Below are positions 2,581 through 19,582 of a stretch of DNA of 21,000 bases, piece by piece (positions within the stretch are counted from its first letter, which is position 1; the number at the start of each line of letters is the position of its first letter). The notes beneath the pieces are model-generated. The model saw nothing but the letters and a program-made list of their open reading frames with translations, did not search any database and was not told the origin of the DNA. Source of the DNA: Octopus sinensis. Its lineage: Eukaryota. The stretch is from assembly GCF_006345805.1 (NCBI RefSeq), contig NW_021823809.1, forward strand, positions 1 through 21,000, written 5' to 3'. Made by a program: the position numbers and the translations under genes.

Positions 2581-3487
2581 GCACAACAGACGAGATGAGA
2601 ATAACAGAATTGTTCGTTAAAACAAGAATATGTTAAGATCGAAGAATTTCCTGAAAGTATAGTAAACAGTTGAGTGTTATTTCCTTCCAAAATCACGAGA
2701 TCACCAATTCATTTAAAATGTATTTACGTCTTGGAGAACTGTATTTGGTGATGGTGTCTTCAGGAAAAAACTTTTCGTTCTGTCTAAGATTCCGAATGAA
2801 AGTTTTTTTGTTGTTATTTCTATATATTACGTTAGCCATTATTCAATGGCGTTTTTTCTTCTTTTAATTTTTTTGTGGTAGTATACTGAGTACGTATGTC
2901 TTTTCCTTTTAAAAAGAACTGTATTTCCTAATGTAATAACAACCCGACCATTCTGTCATGTAATAGGATTCTAGTATTCATTTTTCGTCTCAGTAGTTCA
3001 GAGAATAACACCAAGATTTCGAAAGAGATTTAGCGGCTCTGAAAACAAGATGCCTTGGAAGGCAATAGGCGGCGGAATCTTTCTTTTTCGTGCAGCTATA
3101 CGTATCATAGAAGTCGATCAAGTAAGAATAAAGACAGCCAAATTTGAAGAAACGAACCCTAGTTATGAGTACAAGCATAAAGCAATCAGCGTGAGATGAT
3201 TCTGTCTTGAATTTAAGTATCTTATTTCATAACATGTGCAGAAGATTTGCAGAAACCTCAGTAAAATGGATTAACGGATAAAATGAAAAGCCCTAATGCT
3301 ATCTCGTTTTCAGTTTTTTTTTTATATTGCGGGTTCAAAGCGCCAATGATTTAACCATCTTAGCAATTAAGCTGGCAATACCCGGCCGAAATATCCTTCC
3401 AGTTTCAATTTCAAACTGCCCAAATCTAGCCACTCACACTTACACTACAAATTCATCTTTAAAATATATAATCTTTAAAATATATAA

Positions 3488-3899
3488 GGCGCAGGAGTGG
3501 CTCTGTGGTAAGTAGCTTGCTAACCAACCACATGGTTCCGGGTTCAGTCCCACTGCGTGGCATCTTGGGCAAGTGTTTTCTGCTATAGCCCTGGACCAAC
3601 CAATGCCTTGTGAGTGGATTTGGTAGACGGAAACTGAAAGAAGGCTGTCGTATATATGTATATATATATTATATATATATATGGGGGGGGTCTGTGTTTG
3701 TCCCCCTAGCATTGCTTGACAACCGATGCTGGTGTGTTTACGTCCCCGTCACTTAGCGGTTCGGCAAAAGAGACCGATAGAATAAGTACTGGGCTTACAA
3801 AAGAATAAGTGCCGGGGTCGATTTGCTCGACTAAAAAGGCGGCGCTCCAGCATGGCCGCAGTCAAATGACTGAAAACAAGTAAAAGAGTAAAGAGAGTA
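3488..3899 (+). mobile_element. Full-length octopod-type tRNA-derived SINE (family A)
   Basis: tRNA-like head with A-box-like tggctctgtgg and B-box-like ggttcagtccc. CORE-like atcttgggcaagtg follows, then an internal (TA)n and the tail ...ccagcatggccgcagtcaaatgactgaaaacaagtaaaagag. Close paralogues lie at 12127 and 19583. Confidence 0.9.
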
Positions 3900-5315: not shown

Positions 5316-5517
5316 ACTCATTATTACTATGGACTCCGTGTGGGCAGTCATCTAAAAGTGTTTGTTCGTCATGATGCTGACATAAGTTCCTTGTCTTTCC
5401 TGATGGGAAGACGGCATAATGCACCCTTTATTCCTTCGGAATTGAGAATTGCAGTCTTCGAAACATATGTCGGGAATAAAGGAATTTTGTTAAATCGTCG
5501 TTCGACTCCATTCTTTC

Positions 5518-5521
<4 letters not shown>
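5316..5521 (+). mobile_element. ~206-bp (TA)n-anchored HHR-bearing element, copy 1 (Penelope-like terminal repeat or small retrozyme)
   Basis: About 93% identical (12 substitutions, 2 indels by hand alignment) to the reverse complement of 6690-6895. Its 3' end runs directly into (TA)n. Confidence 0.85.
5386..5485 (+). ncRNA. Type I hammerhead ribozyme with a core mutation (CUGAUGG, A9G)
   Basis: CTGATGG at 5400-5406. Stem II GAAGAC/GTCTTC, then GAAAC-ATAT-GTC at 5460-5471. Stem I gttccttgtctttc/gggaataaaggaat has mismatches. Probably impaired. Confidence 0.75.
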
Positions 5522-5601
<80 letters not shown>

Positions 5602-6008: not shown

Positions 6009-6149
6009 GACATAAACACACACGTGTATATACGTACATTTATATATATATATATACATGCATACACGTATATGGTAGCATTATGCGTGAATGTATCTAT
6101 GTGCGTTTCTATATATATATATATTATATATATCTATATATATATAATA

Positions 6150-6191
<42 letters not shown>

Positions 6192-6224
6192 CATACATAT
6201 GTATTCTAAATATTTAACTATATA

Positions 6225-6272
<48 letters not shown>

Positions 6273-6350
6273 CATATAAATATGTATATATACATACATA
6301 CTTATATGCACATATATATATATATGTGTGTGTGTTTGTATATATATATA
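5860..6350. repeat. (CA)n/(TA)n microsatellite field
   Basis: Direct reading. Confidence 0.9.
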
Positions 6351-6637
6351 TGTTCAACTTCACATAAGACAATTGAGTGTCTGCGTCGTTAAAGTGTCAG
6401 ACATAAAAAGTGTTGCACAATCTATCCCGGATCATTGTTAACTGGGTGTACATTCACTCTTTTATCACATTGCTTTTTATCATTTGCGCTCACTTCTGAA
6501 GTAAATCTCTAGTGATGAAGTCCTGCTGTCTGCATCTGTAAGATGATAGCTGTTGAAATGCTCCATACCCTTATACCCCTATATATACATACAAAGATAC
6601 ATTCATACATATATGTATACACATAAATATATATATA

Positions 6638-6689
<52 letters not shown>

Positions 6690-6693
<4 letters not shown>

Positions 6694-6895
6694 GAAAGAA
6701 TGGAGTCGAATGGCGATTTAACAAATTCCTTTATTCTCGACATATGTTTCGAAGACTGCATATTCTCAATTCCGAAGGAATACAGGGTGCATTATGCCGC
6801 CTTCTCATCAGGAAAAACAAGGAACTTATGTCAGCATCATGACGAATAAAATCCTTTAGATGACTGCCCACACGGAGTCCATAGTGATAATGAGT
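6690..6895 (-). mobile_element. ~206-bp (TA)n-anchored HHR-bearing element, copy 2
   Basis: Inverted paralogue of 5316-5521 with the same 5' boundary (actcatta...). Its 3' end abuts the (TA)n at ~6625-6690. Confidence 0.85.
6725..6825 (-). ncRNA. Canonical type I hammerhead ribozyme
   Basis: The minus strand reads GUUCCUUGUUUUUC-CUGAUGA-GAAGGC...GUCUUC-GAAAC-AUAU-GUC^GAGAAUAAAGGAAU. The core is intact with G10.1-C11.1. Stem I pairs 12 of 14 positions, and stem II has a 6-bp base plus GCAUA/UAUGC. Predicted cleavage is between 6739 and 6738. Confidence 0.88.
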
Positions 6896-8533: not shown

Positions 8534-8573
<40 letters not shown>

Positions 8574-8598
8574 GCTGGTGTTGCTGCTGCTGGTGCTG

Positions 8599-8652
<54 letters not shown>

Positions 8653-8707: not shown

Positions 8708-8944
8708 TAATGCAACATAAATATATCAGACACACTCTAAACAGCATATATCCAATGAAAAATACTTCCACCGGCAAGTTAGATAACCAAAACCAAAGCA
8801 TTGCGTACACGTCACGCAATACCAGCAGTAACACAAGAAAAGATTGCAAGAGAAAAGATACAGTACCGAAAGAGTTTGGGCACTTCCAACAGCAGAAATG
8901 AACACAAAGAGAAATTATTTGGGGTTTGAATAATTCACCTCTGG

Positions 8945-8992
8945 CAACATCCTTAAACAACCTTCGTTCAACATCCTTAAACAACCCTTATT
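8945..8992. repeat. 24-bp tandem duplication
   Basis: caacatccttaaacaaccttcgtt / caacatccttaaacaacccttatt. Confidence 0.85.
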
Positions 8993-8999
8993 CAGGGAC

Positions 9000-9240
9000 A
9001 TTCTGAGCGGGTGCAGTTCTCGACCTGAAGAAAATCTCAACTGGACCCCACCTGCAAGTTCACACGGTGTTTGCCTTGATATAAAATCAGTATGTCGCCA
9101 CATATGGTTGTGGTGCATGTGCCTAGTGTACACTTACAAGACGGGTAGTCAGAATGGGTATATTGGGTTTTGTATATTTTACCCCAGTATCACTTTCATG
9201 GCATGCACTGCTTGGTCACTCAAAAAATCCCCCATTGGCA
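9000..9240 (+). mobile_element. Unclassified interspersed repeat fragment (probable retroelement 3' UTR)
   Basis: catatggttgtggtgcatgtgcc...gacgggtagtc...gtatattttaccccagt...ggcatgcactgc resembles a common octopod repeat end as I recall it. Not verifiable here. Confidence 0.4.
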
Positions 9241-9249
9241 AATATTGAT

Positions 9250-9637
9250 CTGTCGCAAACAAGCTGTTGTAGACCAAAAGCACATGCATCAGTCGCTATG
9301 GAACTCAGGGCTAAAGGCAGAGAGTGAAGGCTTTATATTGGCTGCTGAAGATCAGAGCTTATTGACCGGGAACTGTCAAGCCAATGTGATGAAAAATAGT
9401 TTAGACCCAAAATGACGATACTGCTACAAAATCATGACACGATAGAGTTGACCAACATCTACATTGGGTAATGTGTCGCCATTACTGCAGACAAGTGGCA
9501 CAAACACCACCCTGAAGCTGTAACTGAGGGAGAAAATGTAACTATTCTTTGGGATTTCCCAGTATGTACAGGCGGGACCATCAAATCAAACAGACCAGAT
9601 ATTGTTGTGAAAGACCAAAACAATAAAGCCTATTCTT
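9250..9637 (+). mobile_element. R4/Dong-like non-LTR retrotransposon fragment (zinc-knuckle/RLE region), pseudogenised
   Basis: VDQKHMHQSLWNSGLKAESEGFILAAEDQSLLTGNCQANVMKNSLDPK*RYC, then after deletions and frameshifts HDRVDQHLHWVMCRHY and TADKWHKHHPEAVTEGENVTILWDFPV...IKSNRPDIVVKD. RPD is the start of the restriction-like endonuclease motif. Confidence 0.85.
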
Positions 9638-9890
9638 GTCGAAATTCTTAGTGCTTGGGCAAAAACTCAGTCCAAGCTCTAGGTTTGAGACATCGACGGG
9701 CGAAAGTTTTAGTTTAGATAAATTTATGACCGACTTATTCTGTAGCGTGATGGTTTTTCTAGGGCAAGTGGTTTTCAGAGATTTTTCTCATTTGATTTCT
9801 GACTACTTTTTGGACGTTGCTCGAAATCTTCACTTAAAAGACGGAACCTATTGGGGGATAAAATTTGTTCTGAATGTTCTTGTTGAATTG

Positions 9891-10280
9891 TATTAGGTCA
9901 AGTATGGAATTTGTAGAAAAGAGAAAAAGTTTGCTAATGTTTTATAAATACAAGGACTAGTTTTATTCCTCAAAGCGTGCACCCATATTGTCAATACACT
10001 TTTGCCATTTCAGCGGTAGCTTGTCCAACCCGGAACTGAACTATAAAAGCCCGGTTATCTAGAGTCAATAAAATCTCGGAAAGCCTGTTTTACAGCATTC
10101 TCGGAATTGAATTCTTTTCTATCAAACTTATCCAAATTCTGGAAGAAGTGGTAGTCAGTGGGAGCAAGATCATGTGAGGATGGTGGATGATGGAGAACTT
10201 CCAAGTGCAAATCCTGTAGTTTTGCCGATGTCATTTTTGTGATGTGTGGTCTGGTTTTGTCTTTCAATAAAATAGGATGG
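9891..10280 (-). mobile_element. Mariner (Tc1/mariner, D34D) transposase 3' fragment with right end
   Basis: PILLKDKTRPH...HHPPSSHDLAPTDYHFF has exactly 34 residues between the two Asp residues. The frameshifted C-terminus reads DKLPLKWQKCIDNMGARFEE*. The end is TA|TTAGGTC at 9891. Confidence 0.9.
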
Positions 10281-10318
10281 CCGCAGTGAAATGACTGAAA
10301 CAAGTAAAAGAGTAAAGA
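10277..10318 (+). mobile_element. Isolated family A SINE 3' tail
   Basis: atggccgcagtgaaatgactgaaacaagtaaaagagtaaag matches 3852-3895. Confidence 0.75.
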
Positions 10319-10662
10319 GGATAATATTGAATATTATCATTATTACATTTCGAATATTGTTTCTCATTTCTAAGTATGCCAACCATGTCATACAGTACAT
10401 ACAACCACTGACGCAGCAACTCAGAAGAAAGCACAAGCGTACACATACCGAATCATACACTTGTGCATATCTATTCAGACGCATTACCACCCGCAGTTTG
10501 CTGATTATAAAGGAACCATTATGTTGCAGCACTTTCTCCATCCCACTGTGTCCCTTCGTTAAGACTGATCAGTTTCTATTGTTTGAATATGTGACAGGAA
10601 ATATCTCTGCGGATATCTGAAGGCTTGCGAAGGAATTTAATTAATTCCTTCCCTCTACGCCC

Positions 10663-12105: not shown

Positions 12106-12126
12106 ATGAACAGTTATATATATATA

Positions 12127-12543
12127 GGTGCAGAAGTGGCTGTGTGGTAAGTAGCTTGCTTACCAACCACATGGTCCCGGATTCAGTCCCACTGCGTGGC
12201 ACCTTGGGCAACTGTCTTCTACTATAGCCTCGAGCCAACCAAAGCCTTGTGAGTGGATTCGGTAGACGGAAACTGAAAAGAAGTCCGTCGTATATATGTA
12301 TATGTATATATATATATGTGTGTGTATGTGTTTGTGTGTCTGTGTTTGTCCCTCCAACATCGCTTGACAACCGATGGTGGTGTGTTTATGTCCTCCGTAA
12401 CTTAGCGGTTCGGCAAAAGAGACCGATAGAATAAGTTTCTAGGTTTACAAAGAATAAGTCCTGGGGGTCAATTTTCTCGACTAAAGGCGGTGCTCCAGCA
12501 TGGCCACAATGAAATGACTGAAACAAATAAAAGAGAGTAAAAG
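12127..12543 (+). mobile_element. Full-length family A SINE
   Basis: Colinear with and highly similar to 3488-3899, with an internal (TA)n(TG)n. Confidence 0.9.
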
Positions 12544-13221: not shown

Positions 13222-13360
13222 GGTGTCTCTCTCTCTCTCTCTCTCTCCCTCTTTCTTTCTTTTCCTCTCTCATTCTCCCTCTCTCTCACTACGTTTTATA
13301 TATATATATATATATATATATGTATACATACATATATATGTATGTATGCGCGTGTGTACA

Positions 13361-13425
<65 letters not shown>

Positions 13426-13773
13426 AATATAAATATATATATCATATAGGTATGTACGTATGTTATATCTATCTATCCATCTATCTTCGTGTGTGTGTGT
13501 GTGTGTGTGTGGGTGTGTGTGTGTGTGTGTGTGTTATAGTTTTTTTCTTCAATAACAAACAAATGCAGAAACGTAAATATAAGGCAATACGTGTCTGTCT
13601 GTGAATGTCTCTCTTTGTTTCTCTCTCTCTCTCTCTTCATCTCTCACTCTCTATCATTATATACATACGTACTAACACACATACACTCGGAATTTTCCTT
13701 TTAAAGTCCGTTTCTTGTTTGATTTATGTTCTCGTCTCTCGTTGTGTTCTACGTTTATTTGTGGTGTCCTGTA

Positions 13774-14304: not shown

Positions 14305-14670
14305 TTCTTCACTTGTTTCAGCTATTAAACTGCGGGCATGCTGTGGAACCACCTTCAATAAATTTTAGCCGAAGGAATCGACGCCATTACCTTTTTAAAG
14401 CTGGTACGTATTCTATCGGCCTCTAGTAACAAGGACGGACAGAAACTAACCCCGGTTGTCAAGAGTTGGTGGGGAATATACATAGACACACAGACAGACG
14501 CACATACATATATATATGACAAACTCCTTTTCAGTTTCCATCAACCACATCCGTTCAAAGGATCTTGCCCGGTTCGAAGCTATGGTAGAAGACCCTTGAC
14601 CAGGGTGTCACGCAGGGGTTCTAAACCCTGAAGAATGTGGTTGATACGCAAGCTTCTTACAAGAGAGCCA
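14305..14670 (-). mobile_element. Diverged family A-related SINE
   Basis: Reverse-complement matches to the tail (cttgtttcagc...gcatgctg), attctatcgg, cttttcagtttcc and ctatggtagaagacccttg. Confidence 0.7.
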
Positions 14671-15087: not shown

Positions 15088-15242
15088 TATTAGTCAAGTA
15101 TGGAATTTGTTGAAAAGAAAAAAAGTTTGCTATAAAAGCCTGGTTACCTAGAATCAATAAAATCTCGGAAAGCCGGTTTTACAGTATTGTCGGAATTAAA
15201 TTCCTTCCTATCAAAGTTATCCAAATTCTGGAAGAAGTGGTA
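15088..15242 (-). mobile_element. Second copy of the mariner right end, internally deleted
   Basis: Aligns with 9891-9936 and 10041-10153, with 107 bp missing between two CTA trinucleotides. Confidence 0.85.
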
Positions 15243-16129: not shown

Positions 16130-16672
16130 ATATGCATATGCATATACATATGTAATATTATATATATATAATATAACTATATATATATAGATAATATATA
16201 TATATATATATATATATAGATATAGATATATATATATATATATATATATTATACATATTATATACTAAGATAAAACTTACTTAGAAATGGACGCGTGCGT
16301 TCCGTCATATAATAACAAATTAATAAATAAACATATGCATATATACATCATATGAGAACGTACCTACACTACATGTATATATACATGCATATATGGGAAT
16401 TTTCCCTGTGGGGTATCTTCTACTCTATTTTTTTCGTTGTTTAAGAAAAATGTCCATTGCTTGGTTTTGTGTTTATGTTTTTCGTTTCTCATTGTGTTCG
16501 ACGTCTTTTTGTGTCATGTACCCATATATTCATGTATAGTATACATTAGATGTGGGACGTACATATATGTATGTATATGTAATATATATGTTTTATTTAT
16601 TATTTTGTTATATATATATATATATAATTTATAATTTGTTATATATATAATATATATAATATATATATAATA
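16130..16672. repeat. TA-rich microsatellite/low-complexity flank
   Basis: Direct reading. Two TA-rich blocks are separated by ~250 bp of AT-rich sequence. Confidence 0.8.
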
Positions 16673-16834
16673 TAAACAAATCAAATTGCGATAAAATAAA
16701 AAATAATTATAATCGCTGGTATTACTAACACAAGCCATATATTTTTCATATATCAGTACATTAAGGCGAAATATGTGCTAGGAATACAGAAGCTTGATAA
16801 ATTAAGTGAAATGAAGATAAAAACATTTACTAAA

Positions 16835-16926
16835 CCGGAAATTCTCAGACTGCAGTTTCTTTCTATTTAGCAAACAAGATAATTTATTGCCCAGGGAGAA
16901 TTCATCATGAGACCCTGTTTTTCTGG
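16835..16926 (-). ncRNA. Type I HHR, array unit 1 (C3 missing: mutation or sequencing indel)
   Basis: The plus strand reads ttcatcatgagacc instead of ttcatcagtgagacc. The GUC site would be at 16848/16847. Confidence 0.55.
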
Positions 16927-17225
16927 GATCCTAACTCACTAGAAGCATGTGCGTCTAATGAGTTACTCTTCCTAACTACATATCACTGCGCAGACTCCGA
17001 ACGTCCCGACAACACTAGGGAATTCTGGTATATCGCCTGGCGCTCATAATTTATCGAGAATATGTAAACAAATCAAATTGCGATAAAATAAAAAAATAAT
17101 TATAATCGCTGGTATTACTAACACAAGCCATATTTTTTTCATATATCAGTACATTAAGGCGAAATATGTGCTAGGAATACAGAAGCTTGATATTAAGTGA
17201 AATGAAGATAAAAACATTTACTAAC

Positions 17226-17319
17226 CCGGAAAATTCTCAGACTGCAGTTTCTTTCTATTTAGCAAACAAGATATTTATTTGCCCAGGGAGAATTCATCAG
17301 TGAGACCCTGTTTTTCTGG
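17226..17319 (-). ncRNA. Type I HHR, array unit 2
   Basis: UCUCA-CUGAUGA-stem II-GAAAC-UGCA-GUC^UGAGA. Predicted cleavage 17240/17239. Confidence 0.8.
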
Positions 17320-17623
17320 GATCCTAACTCACTAGAAGCATGTGCGTCTAATGAGTTACTCTTCCTAACTAATCATATCACTGCGCAGACTCCGAACGTC
17401 CCGACAACACTAGGGAATTCTGGTATATCGCCTGGCGCTCATAATTTATCGAGAAATATGTAAACAAATCAAATTGCGATAAAATAAAAAAATAATTATA
17501 ATCGCTGGTATTACTAACACAAGCCATATATTTTTCATATATCAGTACATTAAGGCGAAATATGTGCTAGGAATACAGAAGCTTGATAAATTAAGTGAAA
17601 TGAAGATAAAAACATTTACTAAA

Positions 17624-17717
17624 CCGGAAAATTCTCAGACTGCAGTTTCTTTCTATTCAGCAACAAGATAATTTATTTGCCCAGGGAGAATTCATCAGTG
17701 AGACCCTGTTTTTCTGG
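17624..17717 (-). ncRNA. Type I HHR, array unit 3
   Basis: Core intact, with small differences in distal stem II. Predicted cleavage 17638/17637. Confidence 0.78.
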
Positions 17718-18020
17718 GATCCTAACTCACTAGAAGCATGTGCATCTAATGAGTTACTCTTCCTAACTAATCATATCACTGCGCAGACTCCGAACGTCCC
17801 GACAACACTAGGGAATTCTGGTATATCGCCTGGCGCTCATAATTTATCGAGAAATATGTAAACAAATCAAATTGCGATAAATAAAAAAATAATTATAATC
17901 GCTGGTATTACTAACACAAGCCATATATTTTTCATATATCAGTACATTAAGGCGAAATATGTGCTAGGAATACAGAAGCTTGATAAATTAAGTGAAATGA
18001 AGATAAAAACATTTACTAAA

Positions 18021-18114
18021 CCGGAAAATTCTCAGACTGCAGTTTCTTTCTATTTAGCAAACAAGATAATTTATTTGCCAGGGAGAATTCATCAGTGAGA
18101 CCCTGTTTTTCTGG
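18021..18114 (-). ncRNA. Type I HHR, array unit 4
   Basis: Core intact. Predicted cleavage 18035/18034. Confidence 0.8.
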
Positions 18115-18417
18115 GATCCTAACTCACTAGAAGCATGTGCATCTAATGAGTTACTCTTCCTAACTAATCATATCACTGCGCAGACTCCGAACGTCCCGAC
18201 AACACTAGGGAATTCTGGTATATCGCCTGGCGCTCATAATTTATCGAGAAATATGTAAACAAATCAAATTGCGATAAAATAAAAAATAATTATAATCGCT
18301 GGTATTACTAACACAAGCCATATATTTTTCATATATCAGTACATTAAGGCGAAATATGTGCTAGGAATACAGAAGCTTGATAAATTAAGTGAAATGAAGA
18401 TAAAAACATTTACTAAA

Positions 18418-18512
18418 CCGGAAAATTCTCAGACTGCAGTTTCTTTCTATTTAGCAAACAAGATAATTTATTTGCCCAGGGAGAATTCATCAGTGAGACC
18501 CTGTTTTTCTGG
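18418..18512 (-). ncRNA. Type I HHR, array unit 5 (consensus-like)
   Basis: CCAGAAAAACAGGG-UCUCA-CUGAUGA-AUUCU-CCCUG-GGCAAAUA-AAUUAUCU-UGUUUGCU-AAAU-AGAAA-GAAAC-UGCA-GUC^UGAGA-AUUUUCCGG. Predicted cleavage 18432/18431. Confidence 0.82.
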
Positions 18513-18817
18513 GATCCTAACTCACTAGAAGCATGTGCGTCTAATGAGTTACTCTTCCTAACTAATCATATCACTGCGCAGACTCCGAACGTCCCGACAA
18601 CACTAGGGAATTCTGGTATATCGCCTGGCGCTCATAATTTATCGAGAAATATGTAAACAAATCAAATTGCGATAAAATAAAAAAATAATTATAATCGCTG
18701 GTATTACTACTCACAAGCCATATATTTTTCATATATCAGTACATTAAGGCGAAATATGTGCTAGGAATACAGAAGCTTGATAAATTAAGTGAAATGAAGA
18801 TAAAAACATTTACTAAA

Positions 18818-18913
18818 CCGGAAAATTCTCAGACTGCAGTTTTCTTTCTATTTAGCAAACAAGATAATTTATTTGCCCAGGGAGAATTCATCAGTGAGAC
18901 CCTGTTTTTCTGG
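18818..18913 (-). ncRNA. Type I HHR, array unit 6 (extra A: GAAAAC)
   Basis: One extra T in the plus-strand homopolymer at 18840-18843, possibly a sequencing error. Site at 18832/18831. Confidence 0.65.
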
Positions 18914-19215
18914 GATCCTAACTCACTAGAACATGTGCATCTAATGAGTTACTCTTCCTAACAATCATATCACTGCGCAGAACTCCGAACGTCCCGACAA
19001 CACTAGGGAATTCTGGTATATCGCCTGGCGCTCATATTTATCGAGAAATATGTAAACAAATCAAATTGCGATAAAATAAAAAAATAATTATAATCGCTGG
19101 TATTACTAACACAAGCCATATATTTTTCATATATCAGTACATTAAGGCGAAATATGTGCTAGGAATACAGAAGCTTGATAAATTAAGTGAAATGAAGATA
19201 AAAACATTTACTAAA

Positions 19216-19310
19216 CCGGAAAATTCTCAGACTGCAGTTTCTTTCTATTTAGCAAACAAGATAATTTATTTGCCCAGGGAGAATTCATCAGTGAGACCCT
19301 GTTTTTCTGG
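19216..19310 (-). ncRNA. Type I HHR, array unit 7
   Basis: Core intact. Predicted cleavage 19230/19229. Confidence 0.8.
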
Positions 19311-19582
19311 GATCCTAACTCACTAGAAGCATGTGCGTCTAATGAGTTACTCTTCCTAACTAATCATATCACTGCGCAGACTCCGAACGTCCCGACAACA
19401 CTAGGGAATTCTGGTATATCGCCTGCGCTCATAATTTATTTATCGAGAAATATGTAAACAAATCAATTGCGATAAATAAAAAAAATTTATAATCGCTGGT
19501 ATTACTAACACAAGCCATATATTTTTCATATATCAGTACATTAAGGCGAAATATGTGCTAGGAATACATATTTATATATAAA

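What the first reader, a model, noticed from the sequence alone, without database searches (positions are those of the whole stretch)
16673..19568. Tandem ~398-bp repeat with one hammerhead ribozyme per unit: candidate cephalopod non-LTR retrozyme producing monomer/circular RNAs
Seen: 7.3 near-identical head-to-tail units with no conserved ORF. On the minus strand each full unit has stem I (UCUCA/UGAGA), CUGAUGA, a long stem II, GAAAC-UGCA-GUC and a distal stem I helix. The core is intact in units 2, 3, 4, 5 and 7. Successive GUC sites are 398, 400, 397, 397, 398 and 392 nt apart. Established: tandem non-coding repeats of a few hundred bp with one type I HHR per unit are the architecture of newt satellite 2, Schistosoma Sm-alpha, cricket pDo500 and the metazoan non-LTR retrozymes of mussels and corals. 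In those systems oligomeric transcripts self-cleave to monomers, circularise, and are thought to spread using the reverse transcriptase of another element. Inference: this is such an element in an octopod, and the near-identity of the units implies recent amplification. I cannot tell whether this family has been described.
Basis: partly seen in the sequence, partly recalled or inferred. Interest (0 to 1): 0.92.

Follow-up and report, generated by a model that had tools for sequence, protein, structure and literature searches.

The report
Hammerhead-ribozyme tandem repeat in an octopus
A 2.9-kb non-coding stretch of octopus-type DNA is made of seven head-to-tail copies of a ~398-bp unit, each carrying a slightly off-consensus hammerhead self-cleaving RNA motif; this is the layout of the known animal "retrozyme" mobile elements, apparently not yet described in cephalopods, and its activity is untested.

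Summary
TRF finds one array at 16673-19568 (period 398, 7.3 copies, 97% matches). The minus strand carries seven type I hammerhead (HHR) motifs. Their GUC sites are spaced exactly as reported, and five cores are intact. The unit is non-coding, 35% G+C, and has no ribozyme hit on the other strand. Shared SINE and LINE copies with Octopus sinensis support an octopod origin.

The array has the layout of a metazoan non-LTR retrozyme (Cervera & de la Pena 2020). It starts and ends inside a unit, away from the cleavage site, and lies in TA-rich DNA, the preferred target of some Penelope-like elements.

Caveats:
- The HHR scores 24.3 bits against Rfam's 34-bit cut-off.
- It has an A.A mismatch at 10.1/11.1, a weak helix II interrupted by a ~30-nt hairpin, and a 2-bp helix III.
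- Folding predicts the active fold at P<=0.03, against competing helices.
- The palindrome ACUGCAGU pairs between adjacent units at P=0.98, which points to a newt-like dimeric ribozyme.
- No related copy could be retrieved, so conservation, expression and cleavage are untested.

Verdict: a new member of a known kind, of moderate interest.

The parts
16673..19568 (-). Tandem array: 7 full periods plus 117 nt of a ~398/399-nt unit. On the RNA-sense (minus) strand it starts at unit position 61 and ends at unit position 177, counting from the cleavage site.
   Evidence: TRF; unit alignment; junction mapping.
19224..19297 (-). HHR copy 1, core intact. Predicted cleavage after C17 = 19230.
   Evidence: Rfam RF00163, 24.3 bits; motif coordinates.
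18826..18900 (-). HHR copy 2. GAAA reads GAAAA (1-nt insertion in an A run; possibly a read error). C17 = 18832.
   Evidence: Not reported by cmscan at E<=10.
18418..18512 (-). Reference HHR (copy 3) with its extensions:
- distal helix I 5' strand: 18512-18505
- internal loop ACAGGG: 18504-18499
- helix I 5' strand UCUCA: 18498-18494
- CUGAUGA: 18493-18487
- A10.1 + UUCU: 18486-18482
- internal loop CCCUGG: 18481-18476
- inserted hairpin GCAAAUAA/UUGUUUGC: 18475-18454
- UAAAU: 18453-18449
- AGAA + A11.1: 18448-18444
- GAA + ACUGCAGU + C17: 18443-18432
- helix I 3' strand UGAGA: 18431-18427
- UUUUCCGG: 18425-18418
   Evidence: Element coordinates (the UAAAU position was corrected by hand from the sequence printed there); Rfam alignment.
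18029..18101 (-). HHR copy 4, core intact (one G fewer in CCCUGGG). C17 = 18035.
17632..17704 (-). HHR copy 5, core intact (a U deletion and an A>G change in distal helix II / loop). C17 = 17638.
17234..17306 (-). HHR copy 6, core intact. C17 = 17240.
16841..16914 (-). HHR copy 7, C3 of CUGAUGA missing. C17 = 16848.
   Evidence: Rfam 17.6 bits; alignment.
16563..16672 (.). AT-rich microsatellite abutting the 3' end (RNA sense) of the array. Candidate target DNA.
   Evidence: TRF rows 16563-16674; junction sequence.
19569..19582 (.). 14 nt of TA-rich DNA (plus strand TATTTATATATAAA) between the 5' end (RNA sense) of the array and the head of a SINE copy. No clear target-site duplication can be read.

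Best explanation
The array is a retrozyme-type element: a non-coding, non-autonomous tandem repeat descended from the hammerhead-bearing, Penelope-associated repeats of animals, sitting in an octopod genome.

**Proposed working (steps 1-4 are inferred from the sequence and from published systems; none is shown here)**
1. The minus strand is transcribed as an oligomer. Pol II or read-through is likely, because runs of 5 and 7 T in each unit would stop Pol III.
2. Each unit's type I hammerhead cuts after GUC (C17 | U1.1). Helix III is only A-U and C-G closed by UGCA, and the whole ACUGCAGU is a palindrome. Two neighbouring motifs therefore most likely pair into a 'double hammerhead' with an 8-bp helix III, as in newt and axolotl repeats, and cleave during or soon after transcription.
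3. [quoted passage not shown] In the relaxed RNA, more stable alternative helices hide the ribozyme and would protect the circle. These are GAAUUCUC/GAGAAUUU and an upstream AGUGAG paired to CUCACU.
4. A reverse transcriptase from an autonomous element, most likely a Penelope-like element, copies the circle round and round. The tandem cDNA is then integrated at TA-rich DNA.

After insertion, the array has probably also been reshaped by unequal crossing-over or gene conversion.

**Shown here:** the anatomy of the array, the motif on one strand only, the lack of coding capacity, the flanks, and the octopod background.
For: **Layout**
- 7.3 copies of 398 bp, one HHR per unit and only on the minus strand, no ORF, G+C 34.6%.
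- These are the features listed for non-LTR retrozymes in PMC7229834: 150-450-bp tandem repeats, GC <45-50%, no LTR/PBS/PPT. Mussel units there are 350-390 bp.

**The hammerhead**
- All invariant core bases are present.
- Helix I has 5 bp, then an asymmetric internal loop, then a distal helix.
- Helix III has 2 bp and a 4-nt palindromic loop. PMC4209133 describes canonical metazoan type I HHRs this way (helix III of 1-2 bp capped by a 2-4-nt palindromic loop, active as dimers in tandem repeats).
- The 3' part of loop 2 (AAUAG) still aligns with the Rfam consensus.
- A chance origin is unlikely (7 of 150,000 shuffles).

**Dimer**
- In a transcript holding two HHRs, the ensemble pairs the two ACUGCAGU segments of adjacent units at P=0.70-0.99 (0.98 for the six inner pairs). 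The monomeric helix III has P=0.

**Insertion**
- Neither end of the array falls at the cleavage site (unit positions 61 and 177). A cDNA primed anywhere on a circular template would give this.
- Both flanks are TA-rich, and (TA)n is a preferred target of Naiad and Neptune Penelope-like elements (PMC8557442).

**Possible helper**
- Octopus vulgaris has 31 Penelope-like families counted as recently active (PMC13282606).
- Vertebrate non-LTR retrozymes are phylogenetically tied to PLE pseudo-LTRs (bioRxiv 10.64898/2026.07.22.740005).

**RNA structure**
- The minus-strand circle folds at -90.7 kcal/mol, against -80.0 +/- 5.4 for shuffles (z = -2.0) and -75.9 for the plus strand.
Against: - The Rfam score is 24.3 bits, below the 34-bit gathering cut-off.
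- Position 10.1/11.1 is A.A instead of the highly conserved G-C (PMC4209133).
- Proximal helix II has four A-U-rich pairs, followed by a 6x5 internal loop.
- The HHR fold is -10 to -14.5 kcal/mol against an MFE of -23.2 for the same 107 nt.
- In one- and two-unit transcripts the ensemble probability is <=0.03 for helix I and <=0.1 for helix II, even for nascent prefixes.
- Within the locus the HHR region is no better conserved than the rest: 1.8% against 1.3% differences, Fisher p=0.35.
- A shared C292T variant in three of seven units and more divergent edge units point to DNA-level array dynamics, which need no ribozyme.
- No second locus, no related species copy and no RNA evidence could be obtained.
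- No target-site duplication can be read in the TA-rich flanks.
- The window holds no reverse-transcriptase gene apart from a decayed LINE 3' fragment 7 kb away.
Confidence: 0.62

Rival explanations
1. Relic satellite. The unit descends from a hammerhead-bearing repeat, but the ribozyme is now dead or nearly so. The array is maintained and homogenised purely at the DNA level by unequal crossing-over, replication slippage and gene conversion, with no RNA intermediate.
For: - A.A at 10.1/11.1, a weak helix II and strong competing helices; active-fold helices I and II at P<=0.1.
- Sub-threshold Rfam score.
- The core is no better conserved than the rest of the unit within the locus.
- C292T is shared by three units, and edge units differ more than central ones. 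This is the classic pattern of arrays homogenised by unequal exchange.
Against: - All invariant core bases and the palindromic helix III survive in 5 of 7 copies.
- Nearest-neighbour folding does not score the non-canonical core pairs or tertiary contacts of hammerheads, so low probabilities are weak evidence.
- Short-helix-III HHRs of newts also look poor as monomers, yet they cleave as dimers (PMC6155905, PMC7229834).
- The array is short (7 units), starts and ends inside the unit and sits in TA-rich DNA, which fits an insertion.
Confidence: 0.25
2. Part of an autonomous Penelope-like element. The units would be tandemised pseudo-LTRs or terminal repeats of a PLE whose coding part lies outside the array or has been lost.
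For: - PLE pseudo-LTRs carry type I HHRs, and PLEs insert as partial tandems, often in (TA)n (PMC4209133, PMC8557442).
- Xenopus retrozyme families are sister to PLE pseudo-LTRs (bioRxiv 10.64898/2026.07.22.740005).
Against: - There are seven uniform 398-bp units with no intervening ORF.
- Neither the flanks nor the rest of the 21-kb window hold an RT or GIY-YIG reading frame. The window's ORFs >=45 codons were listed, ten ORFs gave no Pfam match, and the only RT-related piece is a LINE 3' end at 8908-9648.
- PLE HHRs are usually minimal, lacking helix III and having a 7-8-bp helix II (PMC4209133), unlike this motif.
Confidence: 0.08
3. Ordinary satellite with a chance hammerhead-like string and no evolutionary link to ribozymes.
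For: - The score is below Rfam's threshold. At 24.3 bits, my extrapolation of the E-value to a ~2.8-Gb genome (both strands) gives about 1-2 chance hits for this one family.
- The seven copies are one observation, not seven.
Against: - The loose descriptor hits only 7 of 150,000 shuffles of the unit, before counting the palindromic loop 3, the distal helix I and the retained AAUAG of loop 2.
- The motif sits in exactly the repeat size, composition and one-per-unit layout known for HHR repeats (PMC7229834).
Confidence: 0.04

Closest known systems
Metazoan non-LTR retrozymes (Cervera & de la Pena 2020, PMC7229834), in particular those of the mussel Mytilus galloprovincialis
   Same: - Non-coding tandem repeat with one type I HHR per unit on one strand, and low GC.
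- Unit size: 398 bp here, 350-390 bp in mussel.
- Same phylum (Mollusca).
- Like the mussel HHRs, it lacks most of the archetypal loop 1 / loop 2 contact nucleotides.
   Different: - Most invertebrate retrozyme HHRs are reported to have a stable helix III and to cleave well as monomers. Here helix III is 2 bp.
- Helix II carries a ~30-nt inserted hairpin, and 10.1/11.1 is A.A.
- Expression, circles and copy number are unknown here.
Newt satellite 2 / axolotl retrozymes (amphibian type I HHR repeats)
   Same: - ~330-350-bp tandem units.
- Short helix III closed by a palindromic loop, so two tandem motifs can form an extended helix III and cleave as a dimer (PMC6155905, PMC7229834). Here ACUGCAGU pairs between adjacent units at P=0.98.
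   Different: - Different phylum and no sequence relationship tested.
- Amphibian motifs keep G10.1-C11.1 and a compact 4-bp helix II with the conserved loop.
[quoted passage not shown]
   Same: - Type I topology, reliance on dimers, and palindromic 15.2-16.2 / loop 3.
- An unpaired nucleotide right after A9.
- Tandem insertions and a liking for (TA)n targets.
- PLEs are the likely source of the reverse transcriptase.
   Different: - PLE HHRs are minimal (usually no helix III, helix II of 7-8 bp, G10.1-C11.1 highly conserved) and flank a ~3-kb RT/GIY-YIG gene.
- Here there is no coding part, and an extra A lies on both sides of helix II.
Schistosoma Sm-alpha and cave-cricket pDo500 HHR repeats
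   Different: Sm-alpha is SINE-like and its HHR is the canonical, highly active reference motif. No sequence comparison was possible with the tools at hand.
Plant LTR retrozymes (PMC4918200)
   Same: Non-autonomous, HHR-processed, with a proposed circular RNA intermediate.
   Different: Type III HHRs in LTRs, PBS/PPT, 4-bp TSDs, GC >55%, ~700-nt circles. None of these applies here.

Membership tests
Metazoan non-LTR retrozyme (PMC7229834; bioRxiv 10.64898/2026.07.22.740005) | Head-to-tail tandem repeat with a unit of about 150-450 bp, from dimers to large multimers | tested here: met
   Period 398, 7.3 copies, 97% matches.
Metazoan non-LTR retrozyme | A type I hammerhead in every repeat unit (the 2026 preprint's criterion for an 'active' element) | tested here: inconclusive
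   Seven motifs in seven periods, with 5 cores intact and 2 carrying 1-nt indels that may be read errors. All are below Rfam's gathering score.
Metazoan non-LTR retrozyme | Non-coding; no LTR, PBS or PPT; low G+C (<45-50%) | tested here: met
   Stops in all frames; uniform units with no terminal repeats; G+C 34.6%. PBS/PPT were not searched for specifically.
Metazoan non-LTR retrozyme | Target-site duplications, when present, longer than 4 bp | tested here: inconclusive
   Both flanks are TA-rich low-complexity DNA, so no duplication can be delimited.
Metazoan non-LTR retrozyme | Self-cleavage of transcripts at the HHR site | not testable with these tools
   Needs in vitro transcription. Folding gives the active fold a low probability, but it does not model the core or tertiary contacts.
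Metazoan non-LTR retrozyme | Abundant linear and circular monomer RNAs in tissues | not testable with these tools
   No transcriptome access. Pseudo-ORF look-ups in public assemblies found nothing.
Metazoan non-LTR retrozyme | Highly self-paired circular RNA | tested here: inconclusive
   Circular MFE -90.7 kcal/mol, 63% of bases paired, z = -1.98 against shuffles, 7 of 200 shuffles as good.
Metazoan non-LTR retrozyme | Co-occurrence with autonomous Penelope-like elements in the same genome | not tested
   Literature only: 31 recently active Penelope-like families in O. vulgaris (PMC13282606). None is present in this window.
Rfam RF00163 Hammerhead_1 | Bit score at or above the curated gathering score (34) | tested here: not met
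   24.3 bits over the full-length model 1-45. The shortfall comes from a 28-29-nt insertion in loop 2 and two non-standard pairs.
Canonical metazoan type I hammerhead (PMC4209133) | Invariant core C3 U4 G5 A6 N7 G8 A9 / G12 A13 A14 / A15.1-U16.1 / H17 | tested here: met
   CUGAUGA ... GAA-A...U-C is present in 5 of 7 copies.
Canonical metazoan type I hammerhead | Helix III of 1-2 bp capped by a 2-4-nt palindromic loop | tested here: met
   A-U and C-G closed by UGCA; ACUGCAGU is a perfect palindrome with duplex energy -11.1 kcal/mol.
Canonical metazoan type I hammerhead | G10.1-C11.1 closing pair and a compact ~4-bp helix II with the conserved loop | tested here: not met
   A.A at 10.1/11.1. 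Helix II is U-A, U-A, C-G, U-A, then a 6x5 internal loop and an 8-bp hairpin. Only the AAUAG part of the loop is retained.
Canonical metazoan type I hammerhead | Helix I of ~6 bp with an internal loop that contacts loop 2 | tested here: inconclusive
   5 bp, then a 6x1 internal loop, then a distal helix of 5 bp or more: the right geometry, but not the conserved contact bases. A possible Watson-Crick substitute exists, CAGGG with CCCUG.
Penelope-like element (autonomous) | ORF encoding a reverse transcriptase and a GIY-YIG endonuclease between pseudo-LTRs | tested here: not met
   No such ORF lies in or next to the array.

The most novel reading that the evidence does not exclude
The octopod motif may be a working hammerhead of an undescribed sub-type with three features.
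- The canonical loop 1 / loop 2 tertiary contact is replaced by a 5-bp Watson-Crick clamp between the helix I internal loop (CAGGG) and the helix II internal loop (CCCUG). Both loops lie at matching heights above the core, on antiparallel strands.
- A direct repeat of UCUC on either side of CUGAUGA lets the 3' strand (UGAGAAUUU) toggle between helix I (active) and GAAUUCUC (inactive). This would be a built-in switch that allows cleavage of nascent oligomers and protects the finished circle.
- The ~30-nt hairpin in helix II, which contains AAUAAA followed by UUGUUUG, would be a lineage-specific addition.

The evidence is thin. The complementarity has a chance probability of about 0.006-0.008, and the CAGGG/CCCUG hairpin appears in one nascent-transcript MFE. 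There are no homologues with which to test covariation.
Probability: 0.12. Interest if true: 0.6.

Novelty: new member of a known kind. Interest (0 to 1): 0.36.

Why it matters
- **Taxonomic reach.** If the element is active, the retrozyme/circular-RNA life cycle extends to cephalopods. Their genomes are about two-thirds repeats and hold recently active Penelope-like elements. The most detailed octopus repeat annotation (2026, PMC13282606) mentions no ribozyme-bearing repeats. Part of the 'unknown' repeat fraction there might be of this kind; this was not tested.
- **Detection.** The motif is missed by Rfam's gathering threshold (24.3 bits against 34), and stringent HHR descriptors might miss it as well (not tested). 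Counts of hammerheads in cephalopod genomes, such as the 235 Hammerhead_1 loci reported for the giant squid (PMC6962438), may therefore be underestimates.
- **Ribozyme tolerance.** The element offers a natural test of how much deviation a hammerhead tolerates: A.A at 10.1/11.1 and a large insertion in loop 2.
- **If inactive.** It is then an ordinary satellite that keeps a ribozyme fossil.

Tried and rejected
1. **Retrieving related copies for a covariation test.** All attempts were empty:
   - two pseudo-ORF searches of the 5.8-billion-protein set;
   - a full HMMER search of 1.84 billion representatives;
   - two exact-product look-ups;
   - DNA pattern scans of metagenome contigs, GTDB genomes and viral contigs.
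   These collections probably hold little or no cephalopod repeat DNA, so the misses say nothing about copy number.
2. **Other copies nearby.** BLAST of the unit against the rest of the window and against 20 kb of O. sinensis found no other copy.
3. **Pfam on window ORFs.** Ten ORFs gave no match.
4. **A second ribozyme on the plus strand or elsewhere in the window.** Rfam in E-value mode over the whole window gave only microsatellite-driven miRNA look-alikes. A viroid-like, two-polarity ribozyme arrangement is rejected.
5. **tRNA-derived unit.** ARAGORN found nothing.
6. **Insertion into the neighbouring SINE.** Rejected: the SINE head is intact 14 nt from the array end, and the missing stretches are internal deletions.
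7. **Plain MFE folding as a test of the hammerhead.** It does not recover the motif. I treat this as weak negative evidence only.
8. **Reading the extra A after A9 as a PLE-like single bulge.** Rejected: shifting the register leaves only 2 pairs in helix II.


Full report
**1. The observation**

Tandem Repeats Finder reports a single long-period array at 16673-19568: period 398, 7.3 copies, 97% matches, 1% indels. Reading the minus strand and locating CTGCAGTC and CTGATGA gives seven motifs of the form UCUCA-CUGAUGA-[helix II]-GAAAC-UGCA-GUC-UGAGA. Their C17 positions are 19230, 18832, 18432, 18035, 17638, 17240 and 16848.

An alignment of the units cut at the predicted cleavage site shows five intact cores. 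The copy at 18832 has GAAAAC. The copy at 16848 has lost C3.

The 399-nt consensus has stops in every frame. The longest stop-to-stop stretch is 83 codons, and the longest ORF with a start codon is 56 aa.

**2. Is the hammerhead real?**

*Rfam.* At gathering thresholds Rfam reports nothing in the window. In E-value mode the five intact copies match RF00163 (Hammerhead_1) end to end at 24.3 bits against a cut-off of 34. E is 0.0094 for the 3.4-kb region and 0.058-0.06 for the whole window. The C3-less copy scores 17.6 bits. No other ribozyme family and no plus-strand hit appears. The other sub-threshold hits in the window are microsatellite artefacts.

*Where the score is lost.* The Rfam alignment shows three sources:
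- a 28-29-nt insertion inside loop 2;
- a G.A at the outer end of helix I;
- an A.A at the helix II closing position, 10.1/11.1.

*What is retained.* All invariant core bases are present, together with a 5-bp helix I followed by a 6x1 internal loop and a distal helix (GAAAA/UUUUC, then CC/GG). The AAUAG of the canonical loop 2 is kept. Helix III consists of A15.1-U16.1 and C15.2-G16.2 closed by UGCA. Cervera & de la Pena (PMC4209133) describe canonical metazoan type I hammerheads in just this way: helix I ~6 bp, helix II ~4 bp, and helix III 1-2 bp capped by a 2-4-nt palindromic loop. Such motifs are poor as monomers and active as dimers in tandem repeats.

*Chance.* I wrote a descriptor just loose enough to accept the real motif: CUGANGA; 4 contiguous helix II pairs, allowing one unpaired base on either side; GAAA; a 15.2-16.2 pair; U16.1; H17; and 5 helix I pairs. 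It hit 7 of 150,000 dinucleotide shuffles of the unit with both strands searched. It hit the real minus strand once and the real plus strand not at all. The seven copies are one observation, and the descriptor is post hoc. Even so, with the extra features it does not score (palindromic loop 3, distal helix I, loop 2 remnant) and the textbook repeat context, chance is a poor explanation.

**3. Does it look active?** Here the evidence is mixed.

*Against the active fold.*
- The 107-nt hammerhead fold evaluates at -10.3 kcal/mol (canonical pairs only) to -14.5 (constrained optimum), against an MFE of -23.2.
- The main competitor is an 8-bp helix between GAAUUCUC (A9 onward, including the 5' strand of helix II) and GAGAAUUU (the 3' strand of helix I). 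UCUC occurs on both sides of CUGAUGA, so the 3' strand has two possible partners.
- A second competitor pairs an upstream AGUGAG with CUCACU.
- In a 659-nt transcript containing two motifs, ensemble probabilities are <=0.001 for helix I and <=0.002 for proximal helix II. The competing helix, formed in trans between neighbouring units, has P of about 0.9-0.97.
- Nascent prefixes give helix II <=0.1 and helix I <=0.03.

*For a dimeric ribozyme.*
- The same ensemble pairs the ACUGCAGU segments of adjacent units at P=0.98 (0.70 for the two terminal pairs). The monomeric helix III has P=0.
- This 8-bp helix (duplex energy -11.1 kcal/mol) is the hallmark of the double hammerhead of newt satellite 2 and ASBVd (PMC6155905).

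*Limits of the method.* Nearest-neighbour models ignore the sheared G.A pairs of the core and any tertiary clamp, so these numbers are weak negative evidence. Known retrozyme circles, however, are drawn with the hammerhead present in the MFE (legends in PMC7761336), and this one is not.

My estimate that the motif still cleaves at a useful rate, most likely as a dimer and during transcription, is about 0.4.

**4. What the array looks like as a piece of DNA**

*Composition and structure.* The unit has 34.6% G+C, and CpG is not depleted (11 observed, 11.9 expected). The minus-strand circle is modestly more structured than shuffles: -90.7 against -80.0 +/- 5.4 kcal/mol, z = -2.0, 63% of bases paired. 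It is also more structured than the plus strand, at -75.9.

*Ends and flanks.*
- On the RNA-sense strand the array begins at unit position 61 and ends at unit position 177. Neither end coincides with the ribozyme cut. A cDNA primed at an arbitrary point on a circular or multimeric template would give this; so would any DNA-level expansion.
- The 3' flank is a 110-bp AT-rich microsatellite (16563-16672).
- The 5' flank is 14 nt of TA-rich DNA followed by the intact head of a SINE.
- The array has not interrupted the SINE. That SINE's missing parts are internal deletions.
- No target-site duplication can be delimited in such flanks.
- (TA)n is a documented preferred target of Naiad and Neptune Penelope-like elements (PMC8557442).
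- At the 3' junction the unit reads UUUACAUAUUU where the flank reads UUUAUAUUAUAU. Priming by microhomology is therefore conceivable, but this is inference only.

*Differences between units.*
- The alignment gives 41 differences in 2,910 compared positions. 28 are indels of 1-4 nt, with deletions outnumbering insertions 21 to 7. This pattern suggests long-read consensus errors.
- True substitutions are about 0.2-0.3%.
- One C>T at a CpG (unit position 292) is shared by three units (the 2nd, 4th and 5th of the seven that cover this position).
- The edge units carry more differences than the central ones.
- A single rolling-circle copy of one circle should give identical units with only private changes. 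Some unequal exchange or gene conversion, or a heterogeneous template, is therefore also part of the history.
- 'Near-identity means recent amplification' is thus plausible but not compelled.
- The hammerhead region is no better conserved than the rest of the unit within the locus (1.8% against 1.3%, Fisher p=0.35). This is uninformative for so young or so homogenised an array.

**5. Origin of the window**

- A decayed LINE 3' fragment (9149-9648) finds Octopus sinensis LOC115230721 at 70% identity as its only named relative.
- The O. sinensis contig that encodes it (VCDQ01003308.1, locus L001) shares SINE copies with the window at 85-88% over 384 bp, and LINE DNA at 77-83%.
- An octopod origin is therefore supported. 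The species is not determined.

**6. Comparison with what is known**

The layout meets the published description of metazoan non-LTR retrozymes (PMC7229834): short tandem repeats of 150-450 bp, one type I HHR per unit, GC below 45-50%, and no LTR, PBS or PPT. These elements are proposed to be mobilised as circular RNAs by LINE or, more likely, Penelope-like reverse transcriptases.

- Mussel units are 350-390 bp, and their HHRs also lack the archetypal loop-loop bases.
- In its short palindromic helix III the octopod motif resembles the amphibian and PLE hammerheads more than the 'efficient monomer' HHRs reported for most invertebrates.
- A 2026 preprint ties vertebrate retrozymes phylogenetically to PLE pseudo-LTRs (10.64898/2026.07.22.740005).
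- Octopus vulgaris has 31 Penelope-like families scored as recently active, and that annotation mentions neither ribozymes nor retrozymes (PMC13282606).
- The giant squid genome paper lists 235 Rfam Hammerhead_1 loci without further analysis (PMC6962438).
- Full-text searches combining ribozyme, hammerhead or retrozyme with octopus, cephalopod or mollusc found no description of a cephalopod retrozyme. The supplement of PMC7229834 does not mention cephalopods either.

I therefore file this as a new member of a known kind. The caveat is that two defining features of the family, self-cleavage and circular RNA, are untested, and that the element fails Rfam's sequence threshold and the G10.1-C11.1 / compact helix II criterion of canonical HHRs.

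**7. Rivals**

| Explanation | Probability |
|---|---|
| Retrozyme-type element, as proposed above | about 0.62 |
| Relic satellite whose ribozyme is dead and which is maintained only at the DNA level | about 0.25 |
| Tandemised pseudo-LTRs of an autonomous PLE | about 0.08 (no RT/EN ORF anywhere near) |
| Chance motif | about 0.04 |

**8. Most novel reading not excluded**

The helix I internal loop (ACAGGG) and the helix II internal loop (CCCUGG) contain a perfect 5-bp complement, CAGGG/CCCUG, with duplex energy -6.7 kcal/mol and a chance probability of about 0.006-0.008. The two loops lie at matching distances from the core, on strands that run antiparallel in the hammerhead fold. That hairpin appears in the MFE of one nascent prefix.

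It could serve as a Watson-Crick clamp in place of the usual loop-loop contact. The UCUC duplication could then serve as a switch between cleaving and protected states. Without homologues this cannot be tested. I give it 0.12.

**9. What could not be done**

Every route to related sequences failed. The steps that would settle the matter are listed under decisive next steps.

Noticed in passing
window 3481-3850 (+), 12121-12498 (+), 19583-~19990 (+), 14475-14670 (inverted): Four copies of one SINE family, 85-88% identical to a copy in Octopus sinensis contig VCDQ01003308.1. Each of the three aligned plus-strand copies is preceded by TATATA-like DNA. The copy next to the array has two internal deletions (60 and 28 nt) but an intact head.
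   Followed up: partly
window 8908-9648 (+): Decayed 3' end of a LINE, with frameshifts and stops. It is 70% identical in protein to O. sinensis LOC115230721 and 77-83% identical in DNA to the same contig. It is the only reverse-transcriptase-related remnant in the window, about 7 kb from the array.
   Followed up: partly
window 10058-10333 (-); 10041-10153 and 15130-15242: An ORF fragment containing ...HPPSSHDLAPTDYHFF... resembles the C-terminal part of a mariner/Tc1 transposase (from memory; Pfam found nothing at E<=0.01). A 113-bp piece overlapping it recurs 5 kb away at 91% identity.
   Followed up: no
window 5316-5566 and 6645-6895: Inverted repeat arms of ~130-250 bp, 93-94% complementary, about 1.1-1.3 kb apart. 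This is either two copies of one element in opposite orientation or the ends of a DNA transposon.
   Followed up: no
whole window, e.g. 1210-1635, 2212-2580, 6110-6351, 13297-13448, 8535-8652: Very dense (TA)n, (CA)n and (ACT)n microsatellites. They produce dozens of sub-threshold Rfam 'miRNA' matches (mir-297, mir-3149, mir-466 and others), which are artefacts.
   Followed up: yes
unit position 359 on the minus strand, e.g. window 18473-18455: Each unit has AAUAAA followed within ~6 nt by UUGUUUG, which looks like a polyadenylation signal plus a downstream element. Both are sequestered in the two arms of the helix II hairpin. Each unit also has T runs of 7 and 5, which would stop Pol III.
   Followed up: no
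window 18504-18500 with 18481-18477 (and the same positions in every unit): CAGGG in the helix I internal loop is perfectly complementary to CCCUG in the helix II internal loop. The chance probability is about 0.006-0.008, so this is a possible pseudoknot clamp.
   Followed up: partly
window 18488-18481 with 18430-18423 (and the same positions in every unit): UCUC is duplicated on both sides of CUGAUGA. The 3' strand of helix I can therefore pair either with UCUCA (the active fold) or, more stably, with GAAUUCUC. Between adjacent units this competing helix has P of about 0.9-0.97.
   Followed up: partly
array 16673-19568: 28 of the 41 differences between units are short indels, with deletions exceeding insertions (21 to 7). 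This looks like long-read consensus error and may explain the two 'broken' cores. CpG is not depleted in the unit (11 observed, 11.9 expected).
   Followed up: partly
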